Positions 4,427 through 11,894 are shown, numbered from the stretch's first letter. The stretch: DNA of 64,000 bases from Mobula hypostoma (GCF_963921235.1 NC_086124.1:36270001-36334000), one strand, 5' to 3'. A program made the numbers and translations. The notes: generated from the sequence alone by a model not told the origin.

Positions 4427-5150
4427 ATGATGGGCTCCCAGGAGCAGCTGAAGATCGACGTGCTACTACTGCTGTTTCAGCAGCCAGCCGGCCTGCCTAT
4501 CGCCAGCCTCCCATACCAGTTCCTGCTCTTCCATGGCCGCCAGCTTGACCTGCAGGCCCATGGCTACCCCTCACTCGATGCGTTGCTCACTGACATGTCC
4601 AGCATGGTGGAGTTGAGGAGCGTTGGCAGTGGTGGCGTGCCCTACAGCCTCAGGCTCCTGCTCCGTGTCCCAGGCCAGGTGGAGGAGCCCCACCGACCAC
4701 AGGCCCTGGCTCCGGCCTCCAAGCAACCCCAGCCTTGGCTTCTCAGTGTCCCAGTAATCCAGCGGTGGCCCCGCTTTCCCCACTATGTCCCTGTCCAGCC
4801 TCTCCGCTGGGCCCCGCCAACCAGGAGGGCAGGTTCAGCTGCAGCTGCAGCTCCAGTGAGGCCATTAATGAAGCAGAAGGAGGAAGCAGGAAAACCCAGC
4901 AGCACAGATCACAGCCCTGTGGTTCCGGGCAAGGAGGCAGCCCCCATGGCCAATGGGGAGAGGGAGATTCCAATGACCTACAGCGAGGTACTGAAGTCAG
5001 GAGGGCTAGCTGGAGGCAGGAGCCTGGTAGGGTGCAAGCCCAAGATCAGGCCAGGGCTTCAGGCCTACAAAGCAGGTGATCCAGCAGCCCAAAGCCAAGA
5101 CAGGAGTTCAGCCAGCAGGAGAGCAGAGGAGCAGAAGGTGTGCCCAAGAG
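4427..5150 (+). CDS. LOTUS gene coding exon 1: LOTUS-like domain 1 plus Pro/Ala/Gln/Ser-rich disordered linker
   Basis: Acceptor ctcAG at 4408-4409 after a ~770-nt pyrimidine tract; ATG at 4427; LKIDVLLLLFQQPAGLPIASLPYQFLLFHGRQLDLQAHGYPSLDALLTDMSSMVEL; donor AG|GTATGT at 5150/5151. Confidence 0.8.
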
Positions 5151-8100
5151 GTATGTGATGGGACGGTGTGGAGGGAGATTCACTCTGTGTCTGACCCCGG
5201 GAGTGTGTGATGGGACGGTGTGGAGGGAGCTTCACTCTGTGTCTGACCCCGGGAGTGTGTGATGGGACGGTGTGGAGGGAGCTTCACTCTGTGTCTGACC
5301 CCGGGAGTGTGTGATGGGACGGTGTGGAGGGAGCTTCACTCTGTGTCTGACCCCGGGAGTGTGTGATGGGACGGTGTGGAGCGAGCTACACTCTGTGTCT
5401 AACCCCGGGAGAGTGTGATGGGACAGTGTGGAGGGAGCTTCACTCTGTGTCGGACCCTGGAAGTGTGTGATGGGACGGTGTGGAGGGAGATTCACTCTGT
5501 GTCTGACCCCGGGAGTGTGTGATGGGACGGTGTGGAGGGAGCTTCACTCTGTGTCTGACCCCGGGAGTGTGTGATGGGACGGTGTGGAGGGAGCTTCACT
5601 GTGTGTCTGACCCCGGGACTGTGTGATGGGACGGTGTGGAGGGAGCTTCACTCTGTGTCTGACCCCGGGAGTGTGTGATGGGACGGTGTGGAGGGAGCTT
5701 CACTCTGTGTCTGACCCCGGGAGTGTGTGATGGGACGGTGTGGAGGGAGCTTCACTCTGTGTCTGACCCCGGGAGTGTGTGATGGGACGGTGTGGAGGGA
5801 GCTTCACTCTGTGTCTGACCCCGGGAGTGTGTGATGGGACGGTGTGGAGGGAGCTTCACTCTGTGTCTGACCCCGGGAGAGTGTGGTGGGACGGTGTGGA
5901 GGGAGATTCACTCTGTGTCTGACCCCGGAAGTGTGTGATGGGGCGGTGTGGAGGGAGCTTCACTCTGTGTCTGACCCCGGGAGCGTGTGATGGGACGGTG
6001 CGGAGGGAGCTTCACTCTGTGTCTGACCCCGGGAGTGTGTGATGGGACGGTGTGGAGGGAGCTTCACTCTGTGTCTGACCCCGGGAGTGTGTGATGGGAC
6101 GGTGTGGAGGGAGCTTCACTGTGTGTCTGACCCCGGGAGAGTGTGATGGGACAGTGTGGAGGGAGCTTCACTGTGTGTCTGACCCCGGGAGTGTGTGATG
6201 GGACGGTGTGGAGGGAGCTTCACTCTGTTTCTGACCCCGGGAGTGTGTGATGGGATGGTGTGGAGGGAGCTTCACTCTGTGTCTGACCCCCGAAGTGTGT
6301 GATGGGACGGTGTGGAGGGAGCTTCACTCTATTTCTGACCCCGGGAGTGTGTGATGGGACGGTGTGGAGGGAGCTTCACTCTGTGTCTGACCCCAGGAGT
6401 GTGTGATGGGACAGTGTGGAGGGAGCTTCACTGTGTGTCTGACCCCGGGAGTGTGTGATGGGATGTTGTGGAGGGAGAATCACTCTGTGTTTGACCCCGG
6501 GAGTGTGTGATGGGAAGGTGTGGAGGGAGAATCACTCTGTGTCTGACCCCGGGAGTGTGTGATGGGACCGTGTGAAGGGAGCTTCACTCTGTTTCTGACC
6601 CCGGGAGTGTGTGATGGGATGGTGTGGAGGGAGATTCACTCTGTGTCTGACTCCCGAAGTGTGTGATGGGACGGTGTGGAGGGAGCTTCACTCTGTGTCT
6701 GACCCTGGGAGTGTGTGATGGGACGGTGTGGAGGGAGATTCACTCTGTGTCTCACACCGGGAGTGTGTGATGGGACGGGGTGCAGGGAGCTTCACTCTCT
6801 GTCTGACCCCGGGAGTGTGTGATGGGATGGTGTGGAGGGAGATTCACTCTGTGTCTGACCTCGGGAGTGTGTGATGGGACCGTGTAGAGGGAGCTTCACT
6901 GTGTGTCTGACCCCGGGAGTGTGTGATGGGACGGTGTGGAGGGAGCTTCACTCTGTTTCTGACCCCGGGAGTGTGTGATGGGACGGTGTGGAGGGAGCTT
7001 CACTTTGTGTCTGACCCCAGGAGTGTGTGATCGGACGGTGTGGAGGGAGATTCACACTGTGTCTGACCCCGGGAGTGTGTGATGGGACAGTGTGGAGGGA
7101 GATTCACTCTGTGTCTGACCCCGGGAGTGTGTGATGGGACTGTGTGGAGGGAGTTTCACTCTGTGTCTGACCCCGGGAGTGCATGATGGGACGGTGTGGA
7201 GGGAGCTTCACTCTGTGTCTGACCCCGGGAGTGTGTGATGGGACTGTGTGGAGGGAGCTTCACTCTGTGTCTGACCCCGGGAGTGTGTGATGGGACAGTG
7301 TGGAGGGAGCTTCACTGTGTGTCTGACCCCAGGAGTGTGTGATGGGACAGTGTGGAGGGAGAATCACTCTGTGTCTGACCCCGGGAGTGTGTGATGGGAC
7401 AGTGTGGCGGGAGCTTCACTCTGTGTCTGACCCCAGGAGTGTGTGATGGGACAGTGTGGAGGGAGCTTCACTCTGTGTCTGACCCCGGGAGTGTGTGATC
7501 GGACAGTGTGGAGGGAGCTTCACTCTGTGTCTGACCCCACGAGTGTGTGATGGGACTGTGTGGAGGGAGCTTCACTCTGTGTCTGACCCCGGGAGTGTGT
7601 GATGGGACGGTGTGGAGGGAGCTTCACTGTGTGTCTGACCCCGGGAGTGCGTGATGGAACAGTGTGGAGGGAGCTTCACTCTGTGTCTGACCCCGGGAGT
7701 GTGTGATGGGAAGGTGTGGAGGGAGAATCACTCTGTGTCTGACGCCGGGAGTGTGTGATGGGACCGTGTGGAGGGAGCTTCACTCTGTGTCTGACCCCGG
7801 GAGTGCGTGATGGAACAGTGTGGAGGGAGCTTCACTCTGTGTCTGACCCCGGGAGTGTGTGATGGGACGGTGTGGAGGGAGCTTCACTCTGTGTCTGACC
7901 CCGGGAGTGTGTGATCGGACAGTGTGGAGGGAGCTTCACTCTGTGTCTGACCCCACGAGTGTGTGATGGGACTGTGTGGAGGGAGCTTCACTCTGTGTCT
8001 GACCCCGGGAGTGTGTGATGGGACGGTGTGGAGGGAGCTTCACTGTGTGTCTGACCCCGGGAGTGCGTGATGGAACAGTGTGGAGGGAGCTTCACTCTGT

Positions 8101-11100: not shown

Positions 11101-11894
11101 CGTTCTGGGTTTTCCAGTTGATATACCTTGGGATTGATGTTTGGGGGTTCCTATCTTAATAACCACACCAGGAGGGGAGGGGCATTCTGTATTCCCATCT
11201 CAGTAACCACACTGGGGGTGCTGTTTAGGGTTTCTGTACTGCAATACCACACAGAGAGTAGTTTCCCCTGTGATATACCTCAGTAAGAGGCAACCCTCTC
11301 GAAATGTCTTGCTGAGAGTGGTTTCCCTCTCATTACGTTACACTGACAGCAGTGTTCAGGGTTCACTGGGCATTCTCTCAATCTACTGCAGTAAGAGGGC
11401 CGGTCAGTTTTGCCCTCCTCATAGAATGCACTGAGTGGTCTCCATTATGGTGAACCATACTTCTCAATATATCATTCTGGTATTGGTGTGCCACTCTGGG
11501 AGGTCCATTTGGGCTTCCCCCTATCAATTCACAACACTGAGAGTAGTGTGCATGGTTCTCCTCTCAATATCCAACACGCAGAGTTGTGTATAAGGTTCCC
11601 GTCTCAATGTACCACTCTGGGAGGATCATCTTTGATACATCACACGGAGCTTGGGCGTTATTCAGTGGGAGTGGGAGGGAGAGCAGACCCAACAGGCCAA
11701 GCACTCGGGTTCATCTCCGACACGAGCCTCACAGCTGCTGACCCTCTCTTTTGTTTCCCAAAGAGCCTGAGACCACTCCACGCCAGCGAGATGGTGATGG
11801 GAAGTCCATGGGGAACGGGCAATTGGCCGCAGAGCTGCCAGAGTGGACCGTCACCGAGACGGGATTCTATGCCTCGGTGGGCTTGTCCCCCTGA
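4427..11894 (+). CDS. Spliced gene for a triple LOTUS/OST-HTH-like domain protein, join(4427..5150,8430..8765,10603..10875,11764..11894), about 487 aa
   Basis: All three introns are GT-AG and phase 1, and the frame joins cleanly (R-G|GT-LLP, P-G|AT-SS, A-G|AG-PE). Three ~65-75 aa repeats fit the LOTUS pattern as I recall it from TDRD5/TDRD7 (helix 'v..LL...p.Gl....l...y....g..l.....Gy.sl..ll..m...v'). Domain identity is by eye, not by HMM. The last exon and the exon-2 donor are less certain. Confidence 0.75.
5152..8410 (+). repeat. 52-bp minisatellite, ~62 copies, filling the first coding intron of the LOTUS gene
   Basis: Unit gtgtgatgggacggtgtggagggagcttcactctgtgtctgaccccgggagt. Confidence 0.97.
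8430..8765 (+). CDS. LOTUS gene coding exon 2: LOTUS-like domain 2
   Basis: Acceptor ctcctttctcctgcAG at 8428-8429; in-frame VKEWLLSVLKTRGYRDGLYTRKLASLCLKQQCMELSAFLSENRYGSLDELLSCVPEVEMV; donor CAG|GTATCT at 8765/8766 (an alternative same-phase donor G|GTAGGG lies at 8705/8706). Confidence 0.72.
8885..9735 (+). mobile_element. 5'-truncated CR1 LINE
   Basis: [10 protein letters not shown]...WQVEFNPEKCEV..., followed by a CR1 3' tail. Confidence 0.85.
10050..10570 (+). mobile_element. Rex1/L2-like LINE 3' end with five 52-bp tandem copies (10111-10370)
   Basis: SGRRYESLRARPTRLEDSFYPAVIRLLN; unit aggacagcttctaccccgctgttatcagactattgaacaatcccccagtacg. Confidence 0.7.
10603..10875 (+). CDS. LOTUS gene coding exon 3: LOTUS-like domain 3
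   Basis: Acceptor tttcctctgcAG at 10601-10602; IPERVSLLLARYPEGLSTFQLRQAYRETYQRGLAVEGHPSLSTLLAAMGSTVSIRG; strong donor CCG|GTGAGT at 10875/10876. Confidence 0.8.
11764..11894 (+). CDS. LOTUS gene probable last coding exon (EPETTPRQRDGDGKSMGNGQLAAELPEWTVTETGFYASVGLSP*)
   Basis: Branch-like CTGAC at ~11738, pyrimidine tract, aAG acceptor at 11762-11763, phase-1 compatible, TGA at 11892-11894. No clear nearby polyA signal. Confidence 0.5.

What the first reader, a model, noticed from the sequence alone, without database searches (positions are those of the whole stretch)
4427..11894. Hidden spliced gene for a Tudor-less, triple-LOTUS protein
Seen: ORF pieces buried among repeats splice in frame via GT-AG, phase-1 junctions into a ~487-aa protein with three mutually similar ~70-aa modules and disordered linkers. 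Known: the familiar vertebrate LOTUS proteins are TDRD5 and TDRD7 (LOTUS plus Tudor) and MARF1 (NYN/RRM plus LOTUS). LOTUS-plus-disorder proteins without Tudor are known as germ-granule scaffolds in nematodes (MIP-1/2, also called EGGD-1/2). Inference: this may be an unannotated vertebrate LOTUS-only germ-granule or piRNA-pathway factor. No Tudor-like exon is visible before tubulin A starts at 18.8 kb.
Basis: partly seen in the sequence, partly recalled or inferred. Interest (0 to 1): 0.9.

Follow-up and report, generated by a model that had tools for sequence, protein, structure and literature searches.

The report
Tudor-less triple-LOTUS gene in devil ray

Summary
Exons 4427-5150, 8430-8765, 10603-10875 and 11764-11894 join through GT-AG, phase-1 junctions into 487 aa. 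That protein is 100% identical to RefSeq 'uncharacterized protein LOC134339054 isoform X1 [Mobula hypostoma]'. So the gene is not unannotated, only unnamed and unstudied.

All three modules are LOTUS winged helices. M1 passes Pfam's OST-HTH cutoff. M3 matches OST-HTH in all 5 orthologues. M2 escapes Pfam, but its model matches solved LOTUS domains best (Z 7.6-9.4). The rest is predicted disordered, apart from a short conserved motif, P-[ML]-[TS]-Y-S-[EQ]-[VA]-L.

No Tudor, NYN or RRM domain is present. The stop and C-terminal tail are shared by three ray species, and a tubulin gene follows in both Mobula and Hypanus.

Orthologues occur in rays (Mobula, Hypanus, Narcine) and sharks (Pristiophorus, Heterodontus, Mustelus). 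Related Tudor-less multi-LOTUS proteins occur in lungfish, axolotl and skink, and a short LOTUS fragment in a turtle. The whole model aligns collinearly with the N-terminal triple-LOTUS half of TDRD7.

M1 shows no eLOTUS extension, so Vasa binding is doubtful. A multivalent RNA or RNP scaffold role is inferred, not shown. I found no paper on the family. Verdict: a new architectural variant of a known kind, of moderate interest.

The parts
4427..5150 (+). Exon 1 (CDS start, aa 1-241 plus 1 nt): LOTUS module 1 plus a long Pro/Ala/Lys/Arg-rich disordered linker
   Evidence: ATG at 4427 is the first start codon after the in-frame stop at 3635; donor G|GTATGT at 5150/5151. Pfam OST-HTH 26.1 bits against a cutoff of 23.8.
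4427..4675 (+). LOTUS module M1 (aa 1-83)
   Evidence: Pfam OST-HTH above the gathering score. The family profile hits the TDRD5 LOTUS structure 3s93 at E 7.8e-5. Folded helix/strand/helix/helix/hairpin, with 10-residue blocks averaging pLDDT 69-90.
4970..4993 (+). Conserved short linear motif PMTYSEVL (aa 182-189) inside the disordered linker
   Evidence: P-[ML]-[TS]-Y-S-[EQ]-[VA]-L is present in all Mobula, Hypanus, Narcine, Pristiophorus and Mustelus proteins; Heterodontus has ALTYSQVL. It overlaps the only helix predicted in the linker, residues 185-190.
5151..8429 (+). Intron 1, almost wholly a 52-bp minisatellite (5154-8411, 62.7 copies, 93% matches)
   Evidence: Tandem Repeats Finder; GT...AG ends.
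8430..8765 (+). Exon 2 (336 nt, phase 1-1): LOTUS module M2 (aa 245-327 = 8438-8686) plus a short linker
   Evidence: No Pfam hit for the Mobula copy. AF2 model of M2 has pLDDT 75. The top 27 Foldseek PDB hits and the top 10 VIA-align hits are all LOTUS domains, Z 9.4-7.6.
8510..8516 (+). Alternative donor C|GTAAGC inside exon 2, used by RefSeq isoform X2 (402 aa), which removes most of M2
   Evidence: P0019 shares 268 N-terminal and 133 C-terminal residues with P0018; sequence at 8510/8511.
10603..10875 (+). Exon 3 (273 nt, phase 1-1): LOTUS module M3 (aa 365-433 = 10635-10841)
   Evidence: Pfam OST-HTH 16.7 bits, below the cutoff, for the Mobula copy, but all 5 of 5 orthologues match, best E 1.9e-6. 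The family profile hits TDRD7 LOTUS2-3 (2ly1) at E 2e-5. The M1 HMM cross-hits M3 at 24-30 bits.
11764..11894 (+). Exon 4: acidic Gly-rich tail (aa 446-487) and stop TGA at 11892-11894
   Evidence: The tail and stop position match M. birostris, 49 of 54 residues identical; Hypanus is 31 of 54 identical and runs three residues longer; Pristiophorus is partly similar.

Best explanation
This is the Mobula hypostoma gene LOC134339054. It is a genuine, conserved four-exon gene for a 487-aa protein made of three LOTUS (OST-HTH) winged-helix modules. The modules are joined by proline-rich disordered linkers, and there is no Tudor, NYN or RRM domain. It belongs to an elasmobranch-wide family that is related to Tudor-less multi-LOTUS proteins of lungfish, salamander and squamates. 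Its layout mirrors the N-terminal half of TDRD7: one LOTUS, a long linker, then two close LOTUS modules. Each later module sits in its own phase 1-1 exon, so modules can be added, skipped or lost without breaking the frame. Observed counts are 2 in Narcine, 3 in Mobula, 4 in the long shark isoforms, and 10 or more module hits in lungfish. Inferred mechanism, not shown: a multivalent RNP-granule scaffold. The three minimal-type LOTUS modules would bind G-rich or G-quadruplex RNA, the activity reported as ancestral for LOTUS domains. The disordered linkers and the conserved PMTYSEVL motif would provide condensation and partner docking. The germ line is the most likely site, by analogy with the best-studied animal LOTUS proteins (Oskar, TDRD5, TDRD7, MARF1).
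For: Gene model: canonical junctions and identity with RefSeq P0018. Conservation: orthologues in Mobula birostris, Hypanus, Narcine, Pristiophorus, Mustelus and Heterodontus carry the same module order and linker motif. Against Hypanus, M1 and M3 are 82-84% identical while the linkers and tail are 57-64%. LOTUS identity of each module. Disorder. No Tudor: Pfam on P0018 gives OST-HTH only; a Tudor HMM that recovers its own sources at E below 1e-70 finds nothing better than E 1.3 in the six-frame window; a Tubulin gene follows the gene in Hypanus as in the window. TDRD7-like layout: Foldseek aligns residues 6-467 to TDRD7 residues 5-428 at E 1.5e-13, the first 12 Swiss-Prot hits are all TDRD7, and TDRD5 follows at E 1e-6. 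Wider family: the M1 HMM scores 40-54 bits on Tiliqua, Ambystoma, Eretmochelys and an unnamed Logan-assembly fragment, and the M3 HMM scores 55 bits on Protopterus. On invertebrate TDRD5-like proteins the M1 HMM reaches at most 33 bits and the M3 HMM at most 22. In the domain tree the M1 clade (96) is sister (80) to the sarcopterygian N-terminal-type modules, and M2 groups with Tiliqua M2-like modules (98). RNA G4 binding as the conserved LOTUS activity: PMC7498356.
Against: There are no expression data, so tissue and even translation are unverified; RefSeq models are predictions. No DNA of close orthologues could be fetched, so dN/dS was not computed. RNA binding is extrapolated from other LOTUS domains. 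M2 evolves about as fast as the linkers within rays (66% against Hypanus), is absent from the Narcine locus, and is spliced out in isoform X2, so a strictly three-valent mechanism is not essential everywhere. No vertebrate TDRD5, TDRD7 or MARF1 sequences could be placed in the tree, so 'separate family' rests on bit-score contrasts and architecture. Exon 1 and its surroundings are CpG-poor (observed/expected 0.2-0.35), which says nothing in favour of a germline CpG-island promoter.
Confidence: 0.7

Rival explanations
1. It is a Vasa (DDX4) recruiter and activator like Oskar, Tejas/Tapas or nematode MIP/EGGD. Module 1 would act as an extended LOTUS that binds the C-terminal RecA domain of the helicase and stimulates its ATPase, while the linkers anchor the complex in nuage.
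For: M1 is N-terminal, as the eLOTUS is in TDRD5 and TDRD7, and its best solved match is the TDRD5 eLOTUS 3s93 (31-32% identity, TM by target 0.75). LOTUS-plus-disorder proteins recruit the Vasa protein GLH-1 in C. elegans (PMC8616582).
Against: eLOTUS is defined by a C-terminal alpha5 extension that is required for Vasa binding (PMC5458760). After the M1 hairpin the model is disordered (pLDDT about 30-44), and the sequence is proline-rich and not conserved between rays and sharks. Caveat: I recall that this extension is ordered only in the Vasa complex, so a monomer model might miss it.
Confidence: 0.2
2. It is only the 5' part of an ordinary TDRD7 or TDRD5 gene whose Tudor exons lie further downstream or were missed.
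For: The collinear structural match to the LOTUS half of TDRD7.
Against: The in-frame stop and C-terminal tail are shared by M. hypostoma and M. birostris, and in near-identical form by Hypanus. No Tudor-like ORF is seen anywhere in the 64-kb window, nor in the Narcine and Tiliqua loci. The next gene on the same strand is tubulin in both Mobula and Hypanus. Even the 850-970-aa Heterodontus isoforms carry only OST-HTH in the precomputed Pfam list.
Confidence: 0.02
3. It is a decaying or neutrally drifting partial duplicate of a TDRD gene, an open frame without function that gene predictors pick up.
For: The protein evolves fast: 93% identity within Mobula, 66-71% against Hypanus, about 33% against sharks. 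Module number varies, and the gene sits among repeats.
Against: The frame, the splice phases, three folded modules and an 8-residue linker motif are all kept across the ray-shark split. Folded modules M1 and M3 are more conserved than the linkers.
Confidence: 0.05
4. It is a somatic or broadly expressed post-transcriptional regulator, a MARF1-like mRNA binder without the nuclease, rather than a germ-line factor.
For: All three modules look like minimal LOTUS, the MARF1 type. MARF1 also acts in somatic cells (PMC6294520 abstract). No promoter CpG island is seen.
Against: No NYN or RRM domain. Sequence and structure place the modules nearer to TDRD5 and TDRD7 than to MARF1, whose structure 5yad ranks 35th, and the MARF1-like modules form a separate clade.
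Confidence: 0.1

Closest known systems
TDRD7 (vertebrate Tudor domain-containing protein 7), N-terminal half
   Same: Three LOTUS domains with the same spacing: one at the N-terminus, a long disordered linker, then two close together. Foldseek aligns residues 6-467 to TDRD7 residues 5-428 at E 1.5e-13, and the first 12 Swiss-Prot hits are all TDRD7. The M3 profile hits TDRD7 LOTUS2-3 (2ly1) at E 2e-5.
   Different: There are no Tudor domains at all: 487 aa against about 1,100. Sequence identity is only 13-17% in the structural alignments. M1 lacks a visible eLOTUS extension.
TDRD5 (and Drosophila Tejas)
   Same: M1 is closest in sequence to the solved TDRD5 LOTUS 3s93 (profile E 7.8e-5, 31-32% identity, TM by target 0.75). 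Invertebrate TDRD5-like proteins are among the few sequence hits of exon 1.
   Different: No Tudor domain. The whole-protein structural match is weaker than to TDRD7, E 1e-6.
MIP-1/MIP-2 (EGGD-1/EGGD-2) of C. elegans
   Same: The design principle is the same: LOTUS domains plus long intrinsically disordered regions. These proteins scaffold perinuclear germ granules and recruit the Vasa protein GLH-1 (PMC8616582). That they lack Tudor domains is from the finding and my own knowledge, not from the passages read.
   Different: Homology was not tested here because no sequence was available. From my own knowledge they have two LOTUS domains, not three. This is an architectural analogy only.
MARF1
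   Same: Several minimal-type LOTUS domains in tandem.
   Different: MARF1 has NYN and RRM domains and 6-8 LOTUS domains. None of its extra domains is present here, and MARF1-like modules cluster apart.
Uncharacterised multi-LOTUS / DUF7515 proteins of Protopterus, Ambystoma and Tiliqua, plus a short Eretmochelys fragment
   Same: Tudor-less, with M1-, M2- and M3-type modules. In Tiliqua each module hit lies in its own open-frame segment. These are the nearest relatives outside elasmobranchs.
   Different: The three full-length proteins are much longer (1,163-2,879 aa) with tandemly amplified modules. They lack the PMTYSEVL motif. Orthology is not established.

Membership tests
LOTUS / OST-HTH domain (Pfam PF12872) | Match to the Pfam OST-HTH model at or above its gathering score | tested here: met
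   Exon 1 alone scores 26.1 bits and whole P0018 scores 37.9 bits, against a cutoff of 23.8. M3 is below the cutoff in Mobula (16.7-16.9 bits), but all 5 of 5 orthologues match, best E 1.9e-6. M2 does not match OST-HTH; 1 of 5 orthologues matches DUF7515 weakly.
LOTUS / OST-HTH domain (Pfam PF12872) | Winged-helix fold that superposes on solved LOTUS domains better than on other winged helices | tested here: met
   For the full model, 7 of the top 10 PDB hits are TDRD7, TDRD5 or Tejas LOTUS chains and one is the Oskar N-terminal (LOTUS) domain, with TM by target 0.68-0.79 for the single-domain chains. For M2 alone, the top 10 by VIA-align are all LOTUS (Z 9.4-7.6) and generic winged helices start at Z 7.2. 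That margin is modest.
eLOTUS subclass (Vasa-binding) | C-terminal alpha5 extension after the beta-hairpin, required for Vasa binding (Jeske 2017, PMC5458760) | tested here: not met
   No helix is predicted after residue 79. Residues 84 onwards have pLDDT below 50, are proline-rich, and are not conserved between rays and sharks. Caveat: an extension that orders only on binding could be missed by a monomer model.
eLOTUS subclass (Vasa-binding) | Physical binding to Vasa/DDX4 and stimulation of its ATPase | not testable with these tools
   This needs pull-down and ATPase assays.
TDRD5 / TDRD7 family | One or more Tudor domains C-terminal to the LOTUS domains | tested here: not met
   Pfam finds no TUDOR in P0018, P0001, P0020, P0004, P0008, P0017 or P0021. 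A Tudor HMM finds nothing better than E 1.3 in the six-frame window. The stop is conserved, and tubulin is the next gene.
MARF1 family | NYN nuclease and RRM domains N-terminal to tandem LOTUS domains | tested here: not met
   Pfam on P0018 returns OST-HTH only.
Nematode MIP/EGGD LOTUS scaffolds | Sequence homology beyond the shared LOTUS fold | not tested
   No MIP or EGGD sequence was available through the tools. Only the architecture (LOTUS plus disordered regions, no Tudor) is shared.

The most novel reading that the evidence does not exclude
Jawed vertebrates have a fourth, undescribed LOTUS family besides TDRD5, TDRD7 and MARF1. It would be a Tudor-less, TDRD7-like scaffold that predates the split of cartilaginous and bony vertebrates. 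It is built from exons that each carry one module (phase 1-1 in Mobula), so copy number drifts from 2 to more than 10. It would have been retained in elasmobranchs, lungfish, salamanders and reptiles but lost, or diverged beyond recognition, in mammals, birds and teleosts. It could then be a lineage-restricted germ-granule organiser in animals whose germ-plasm biology is almost unknown.
Probability: 0.45. Interest if true: 0.65.

Novelty: new variant of a known kind. Interest (0 to 1): 0.5.

Why it matters
LOTUS proteins organise germ granules and the piRNA machinery. In vertebrates the textbook set is TDRD5, TDRD7 and MARF1. A conserved vertebrate protein made of LOTUS modules and disorder only would show that the 'LOTUS plus disordered region' scaffold design is not confined to nematodes and insects. 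It would give a natural experiment on what LOTUS domains do without Tudor-mediated binding of methylated PIWI proteins. It would also be a handle on germ-line biology in sharks and rays, where almost nothing molecular is known. The one-module-per-exon, phase 1-1 structure offers a clear example of domain-number evolution by exon gain, loss and skipping. Against that, the gene is already predicted in public annotation, and nothing yet shows where it is expressed.

Tried and rejected
1. I did not type the spliced 487-aa protein into tools. I searched the exons by reference and then switched to P0018 once identity was shown.
3. The word-index search with the family alignment was swamped by low-complexity words: 8000 candidates and only 6 hits. 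A region-restricted search with the sawshark protein added Heterodontus only. Absence from chimaeras, skates, teleosts, birds and mammals is therefore not established.
4. DNA of the M. birostris, Hypanus and Mustelus orthologues could not be fetched, so there is no dN/dS and no exon-by-exon comparison. Only the Narcine and Tiliqua loci came with DNA.
5. No vertebrate TDRD5, TDRD7 or MARF1 sequence could be obtained as a usable record. The domain tree therefore has only invertebrate TDRD5-like and one MARF1-like protein as outgroups. It has 82 columns and many unresolved forks.
6. Single-sequence and profile searches of M2 against PDB sequences found nothing meaningful; only structure identified it.
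7. The Tudor-exon hypothesis was tested and rejected.
8. A search for a remnant of the sharks' fourth cassette module (DUF7515-type) found nothing in the window.
9. Literature searches for DUF7515, LOC134339054, LOTUS with shark or elasmobranch, and Tudor-less LOTUS proteins returned nothing relevant.
10. The scan's own notes hold nothing on Tudor, TDRD or LOTUS in this genome.

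
Full report
**Observation.**
Joining 4427-5150, 8430-8765, 10603-10875 and 11764-11894 gives 1464 nt. All donors begin GT, all acceptors end AG after pyrimidine tracts, and every junction is in phase 1. The product is 487 aa ending at TGA 11892-11894. ATG 4427 is the first start codon after the in-frame stop at 3635.

A word-index search seeded with the Mobula birostris hit returned P0018. This is NCBI 'uncharacterized protein LOC134339054 isoform X1 [Mobula hypostoma]', 487 aa. 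The window therefore comes from the lesser devil ray. The gene is not unannotated; it is simply unnamed.

A second RefSeq isoform (P0019, 402 aa) uses a strong internal donor, C|GTAAGC at 8510/8511, and drops most of the second module.

**The three modules.**
AlphaFold2 with a six-orthologue alignment gives three folded blocks: 1-83, 247-327 and 367-432. Most of their 10-residue blocks average pLDDT 70-90 and a few average 61-69. Each block has helices followed by a beta-hairpin. Apart from residue 188 and short edges next to the modules, everything else is below pLDDT 50.

- **M1** passes Pfam OST-HTH: 26.1 bits against a cutoff of 23.8 for exon 1, and 37.9 bits for the whole protein. Its family profile hits the solved TDRD5 LOTUS 3s93 at E 7.8e-5.
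- **M3** is below the cutoff in Mobula, but all five orthologues match OST-HTH, best E 1.9e-6. Its profile hits TDRD7 LOTUS2-3 at E 2e-5.
- **M2** has no Pfam or PDB sequence match. Modelled alone it reaches pLDDT 75. Its top 27 Foldseek PDB hits and top 10 VIA-align hits are all LOTUS domains (TDRD5, TDRD7, Oskar, MARF1, Tejas; Z 9.4-7.6). Generic winged helices begin at Z 7.2.

'Triple LOTUS' therefore holds, with M2 a divergent copy.

**No Tudor.**
- Pfam finds only OST-HTH in the Mobula, Hypanus, Narcine, Pristiophorus and Mustelus proteins. One sawshark isoform also has DUF7515.
- A Tudor HMM built from three invertebrate TDRD5-like proteins recovers those proteins at E below 1e-70. In the six-frame translation of the whole 64-kb window it finds nothing better than E 1.3.
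- The stop and C-terminal tail are shared with M. birostris and, in near-identical form, with Hypanus.
- The next gene on the strand is beta-tubulin at 18852. In Hypanus a Tubulin gene likewise starts 1.7 kb after the orthologue.

This is not a truncated view of TDRD5 or TDRD7.

**Family and range.**
The exhaustive search with exon 1 found only 14 cluster representatives at E up to 1e-3. Named members are 'uncharacterized' proteins of:
- rays: Mobula birostris, Narcine bancroftii and, Hypanus sabinus;
- sharks: Pristiophorus japonicus, Mustelus asterias and, Heterodontus francisci;
- bony vertebrates: Tiliqua scincoides (1,620 aa), Protopterus annectens (2,807-2,879 aa), Ambystoma mexicanum (1,163 aa) and short fragments from the turtle Eretmochelys;
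- invertebrates: TDRD5-like proteins, plus one unnamed NYN-plus-LOTUS protein.

Rays and sharks share the order M1, linker motif, M2, M3. The motif is P-[ML]-[TS]-Y-S-[EQ]-[VA]-L. It lies about 100 residues after M1 and overlaps the only helix predicted in the linker.

Against Hypanus, M1 and M3 are 82-84% identical and the linkers 57-64%.

Module number varies:
- Narcine has no M2 in its genomic locus.
- The long isoforms of Pristiophorus and Heterodontus insert a fourth, DUF7515-type module between M2 and M3. No trace of it is found in the Mobula window.
- In the Tiliqua locus the M1-type and M2-type hits fall in separate open-frame segments along the gene, one module per segment.

In Mobula, exons 2 and 3 are both phase 1-1, which explains why modules can be added, skipped or lost in frame.

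**Relationship to known families.**
- The whole model aligns collinearly, residues 6-467, with residues 5-428 of TDRD7 at E 1.5e-13. The first 12 Swiss-Prot hits are all TDRD7, and TDRD5 follows at E 1e-6. The N-terminal half of TDRD7 is thus the closest known architecture.
- In sequence, the M1 HMM scores 40-54 bits on the skink, axolotl, turtle and an unnamed Logan-assembly fragment. It reaches at most 33 bits on invertebrate TDRD5-like modules, and the M1 family profile scores 26 bits on human TDRD5.
- The M3 HMM scores 55 bits on lungfish modules, against at most 22 on TDRD5-like ones.
- In an 82-column domain tree, elasmobranch M1 is a clade (96) sister (80) to the sarcopterygian N-terminal-type modules. 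M2 groups with Tiliqua M2-like and DUF7515 modules (98). MARF1-like modules are separate (96).

This points to a jawed-vertebrate-wide Tudor-less LOTUS family. However, no vertebrate TDRD5 or TDRD7 sequence could be put in the tree, so independence from TDRD7 is not proven.

Protein-atlas look-alikes include two chordate clusters of about 390-450-aa LOTUS/DUF7515 proteins, with 190 and 56 members. This is a lead only.

**Mechanism (inferred).**
Jeske et al. define eLOTUS, the Vasa-binding and Vasa-activating subclass, by a C-terminal alpha5 extension. Minimal LOTUS domains, as in MARF1, lack it (PMC5458760). After the M1 hairpin the model is disordered, and the sequence is proline-rich and not conserved. 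I therefore do not file M1 as eLOTUS.

[quoted passage not shown] The most economical reading is a multivalent RNA or RNP scaffold:
- three LOTUS modules as RNA (or partner) binding sites;
- basic linker 1 (pI 10.2, 14% Pro) and the other disordered regions for condensation;
- the conserved motif as a docking site.

This is the same design as nematode MIP/EGGD proteins, where the LOTUS domains are thought to recruit the Vasa protein GLH-1 and the disordered regions anchor the granule (PMC8616582). A germ-line site is an analogy, not a result.

**Novelty.**
I found no paper on the gene, on DUF7515, or on Tudor-less vertebrate LOTUS proteins. The fold and the scaffold idea are known, but this architecture is undescribed in vertebrates. 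I rate it a new variant of a known kind, of moderate interest. The interest is tempered because public annotation already predicts the gene and because there is no expression or functional evidence.

Noticed in passing
window 5154-8411: Intron 1 of the LOTUS gene is almost entirely one 52-bp minisatellite (62.7 copies, 93% matches). It starts 3 nt after the donor and ends 18 nt before the acceptor. Every unit carries GT-rich donor-like strings, yet the annotated splice jumps the whole array.
   Followed up: partly
window 3645-4393: A CT-rich 24-bp tandem array ends about 33 nt before the start codon. It is open in the gene's reading frame back to 3638 (a proline/serine-rich translation) but has no in-frame start codon. 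It is probably 5'UTR or promoter DNA made of a repeat.
   Followed up: partly
Hypanus sabinus orthologue (no DNA): The orthologous 476-aa gene spans about 132 kb in Hypanus, against 7.5 kb in Mobula hypostoma and 5.5 kb in M. birostris. This is extreme intron-size variation for the same four-exon-type gene.
   Followed up: no
L001 (Tiliqua scincoides) 10001-40658: The skink relative is a chain of M1-type and M2-type LOTUS hits in separate open-frame segments. It is followed 1.4 kb downstream by a second, 1,288-aa DUF7515-containing gene, which points to a local tandem expansion of Tudor-less LOTUS genes.
   Followed up: partly
window 14394-15616 and 17911-18613: Two more minisatellites lie between the LOTUS gene and the tubulin gene: a 28-bp unit of 43 copies and a unit of about 50 bp with 14.6 copies. 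The second ends about 240 bp before the tubulin ATG.
   Followed up: no
window 8766-9214, 13921-14166, 20715-21155, 23281-23583, 26250-26702(-): Open frames carry repeated stretches that look like reverse-transcriptase fragments of dispersed retroelements (my reading from memory, not searched). One runs on in frame directly after the exon 2 donor, so a stop-to-stop ORF scan overstates exon 2.
   Followed up: no
P0021 residues 470-543; P0026: Sawshark and horn-shark long isoforms carry a fourth LOTUS-like module, a 74-aa isoform-specific insert that matches Pfam DUF7515, between M2 and M3. This suggests DUF7515 is simply a divergent LOTUS type.
   Followed up: partly
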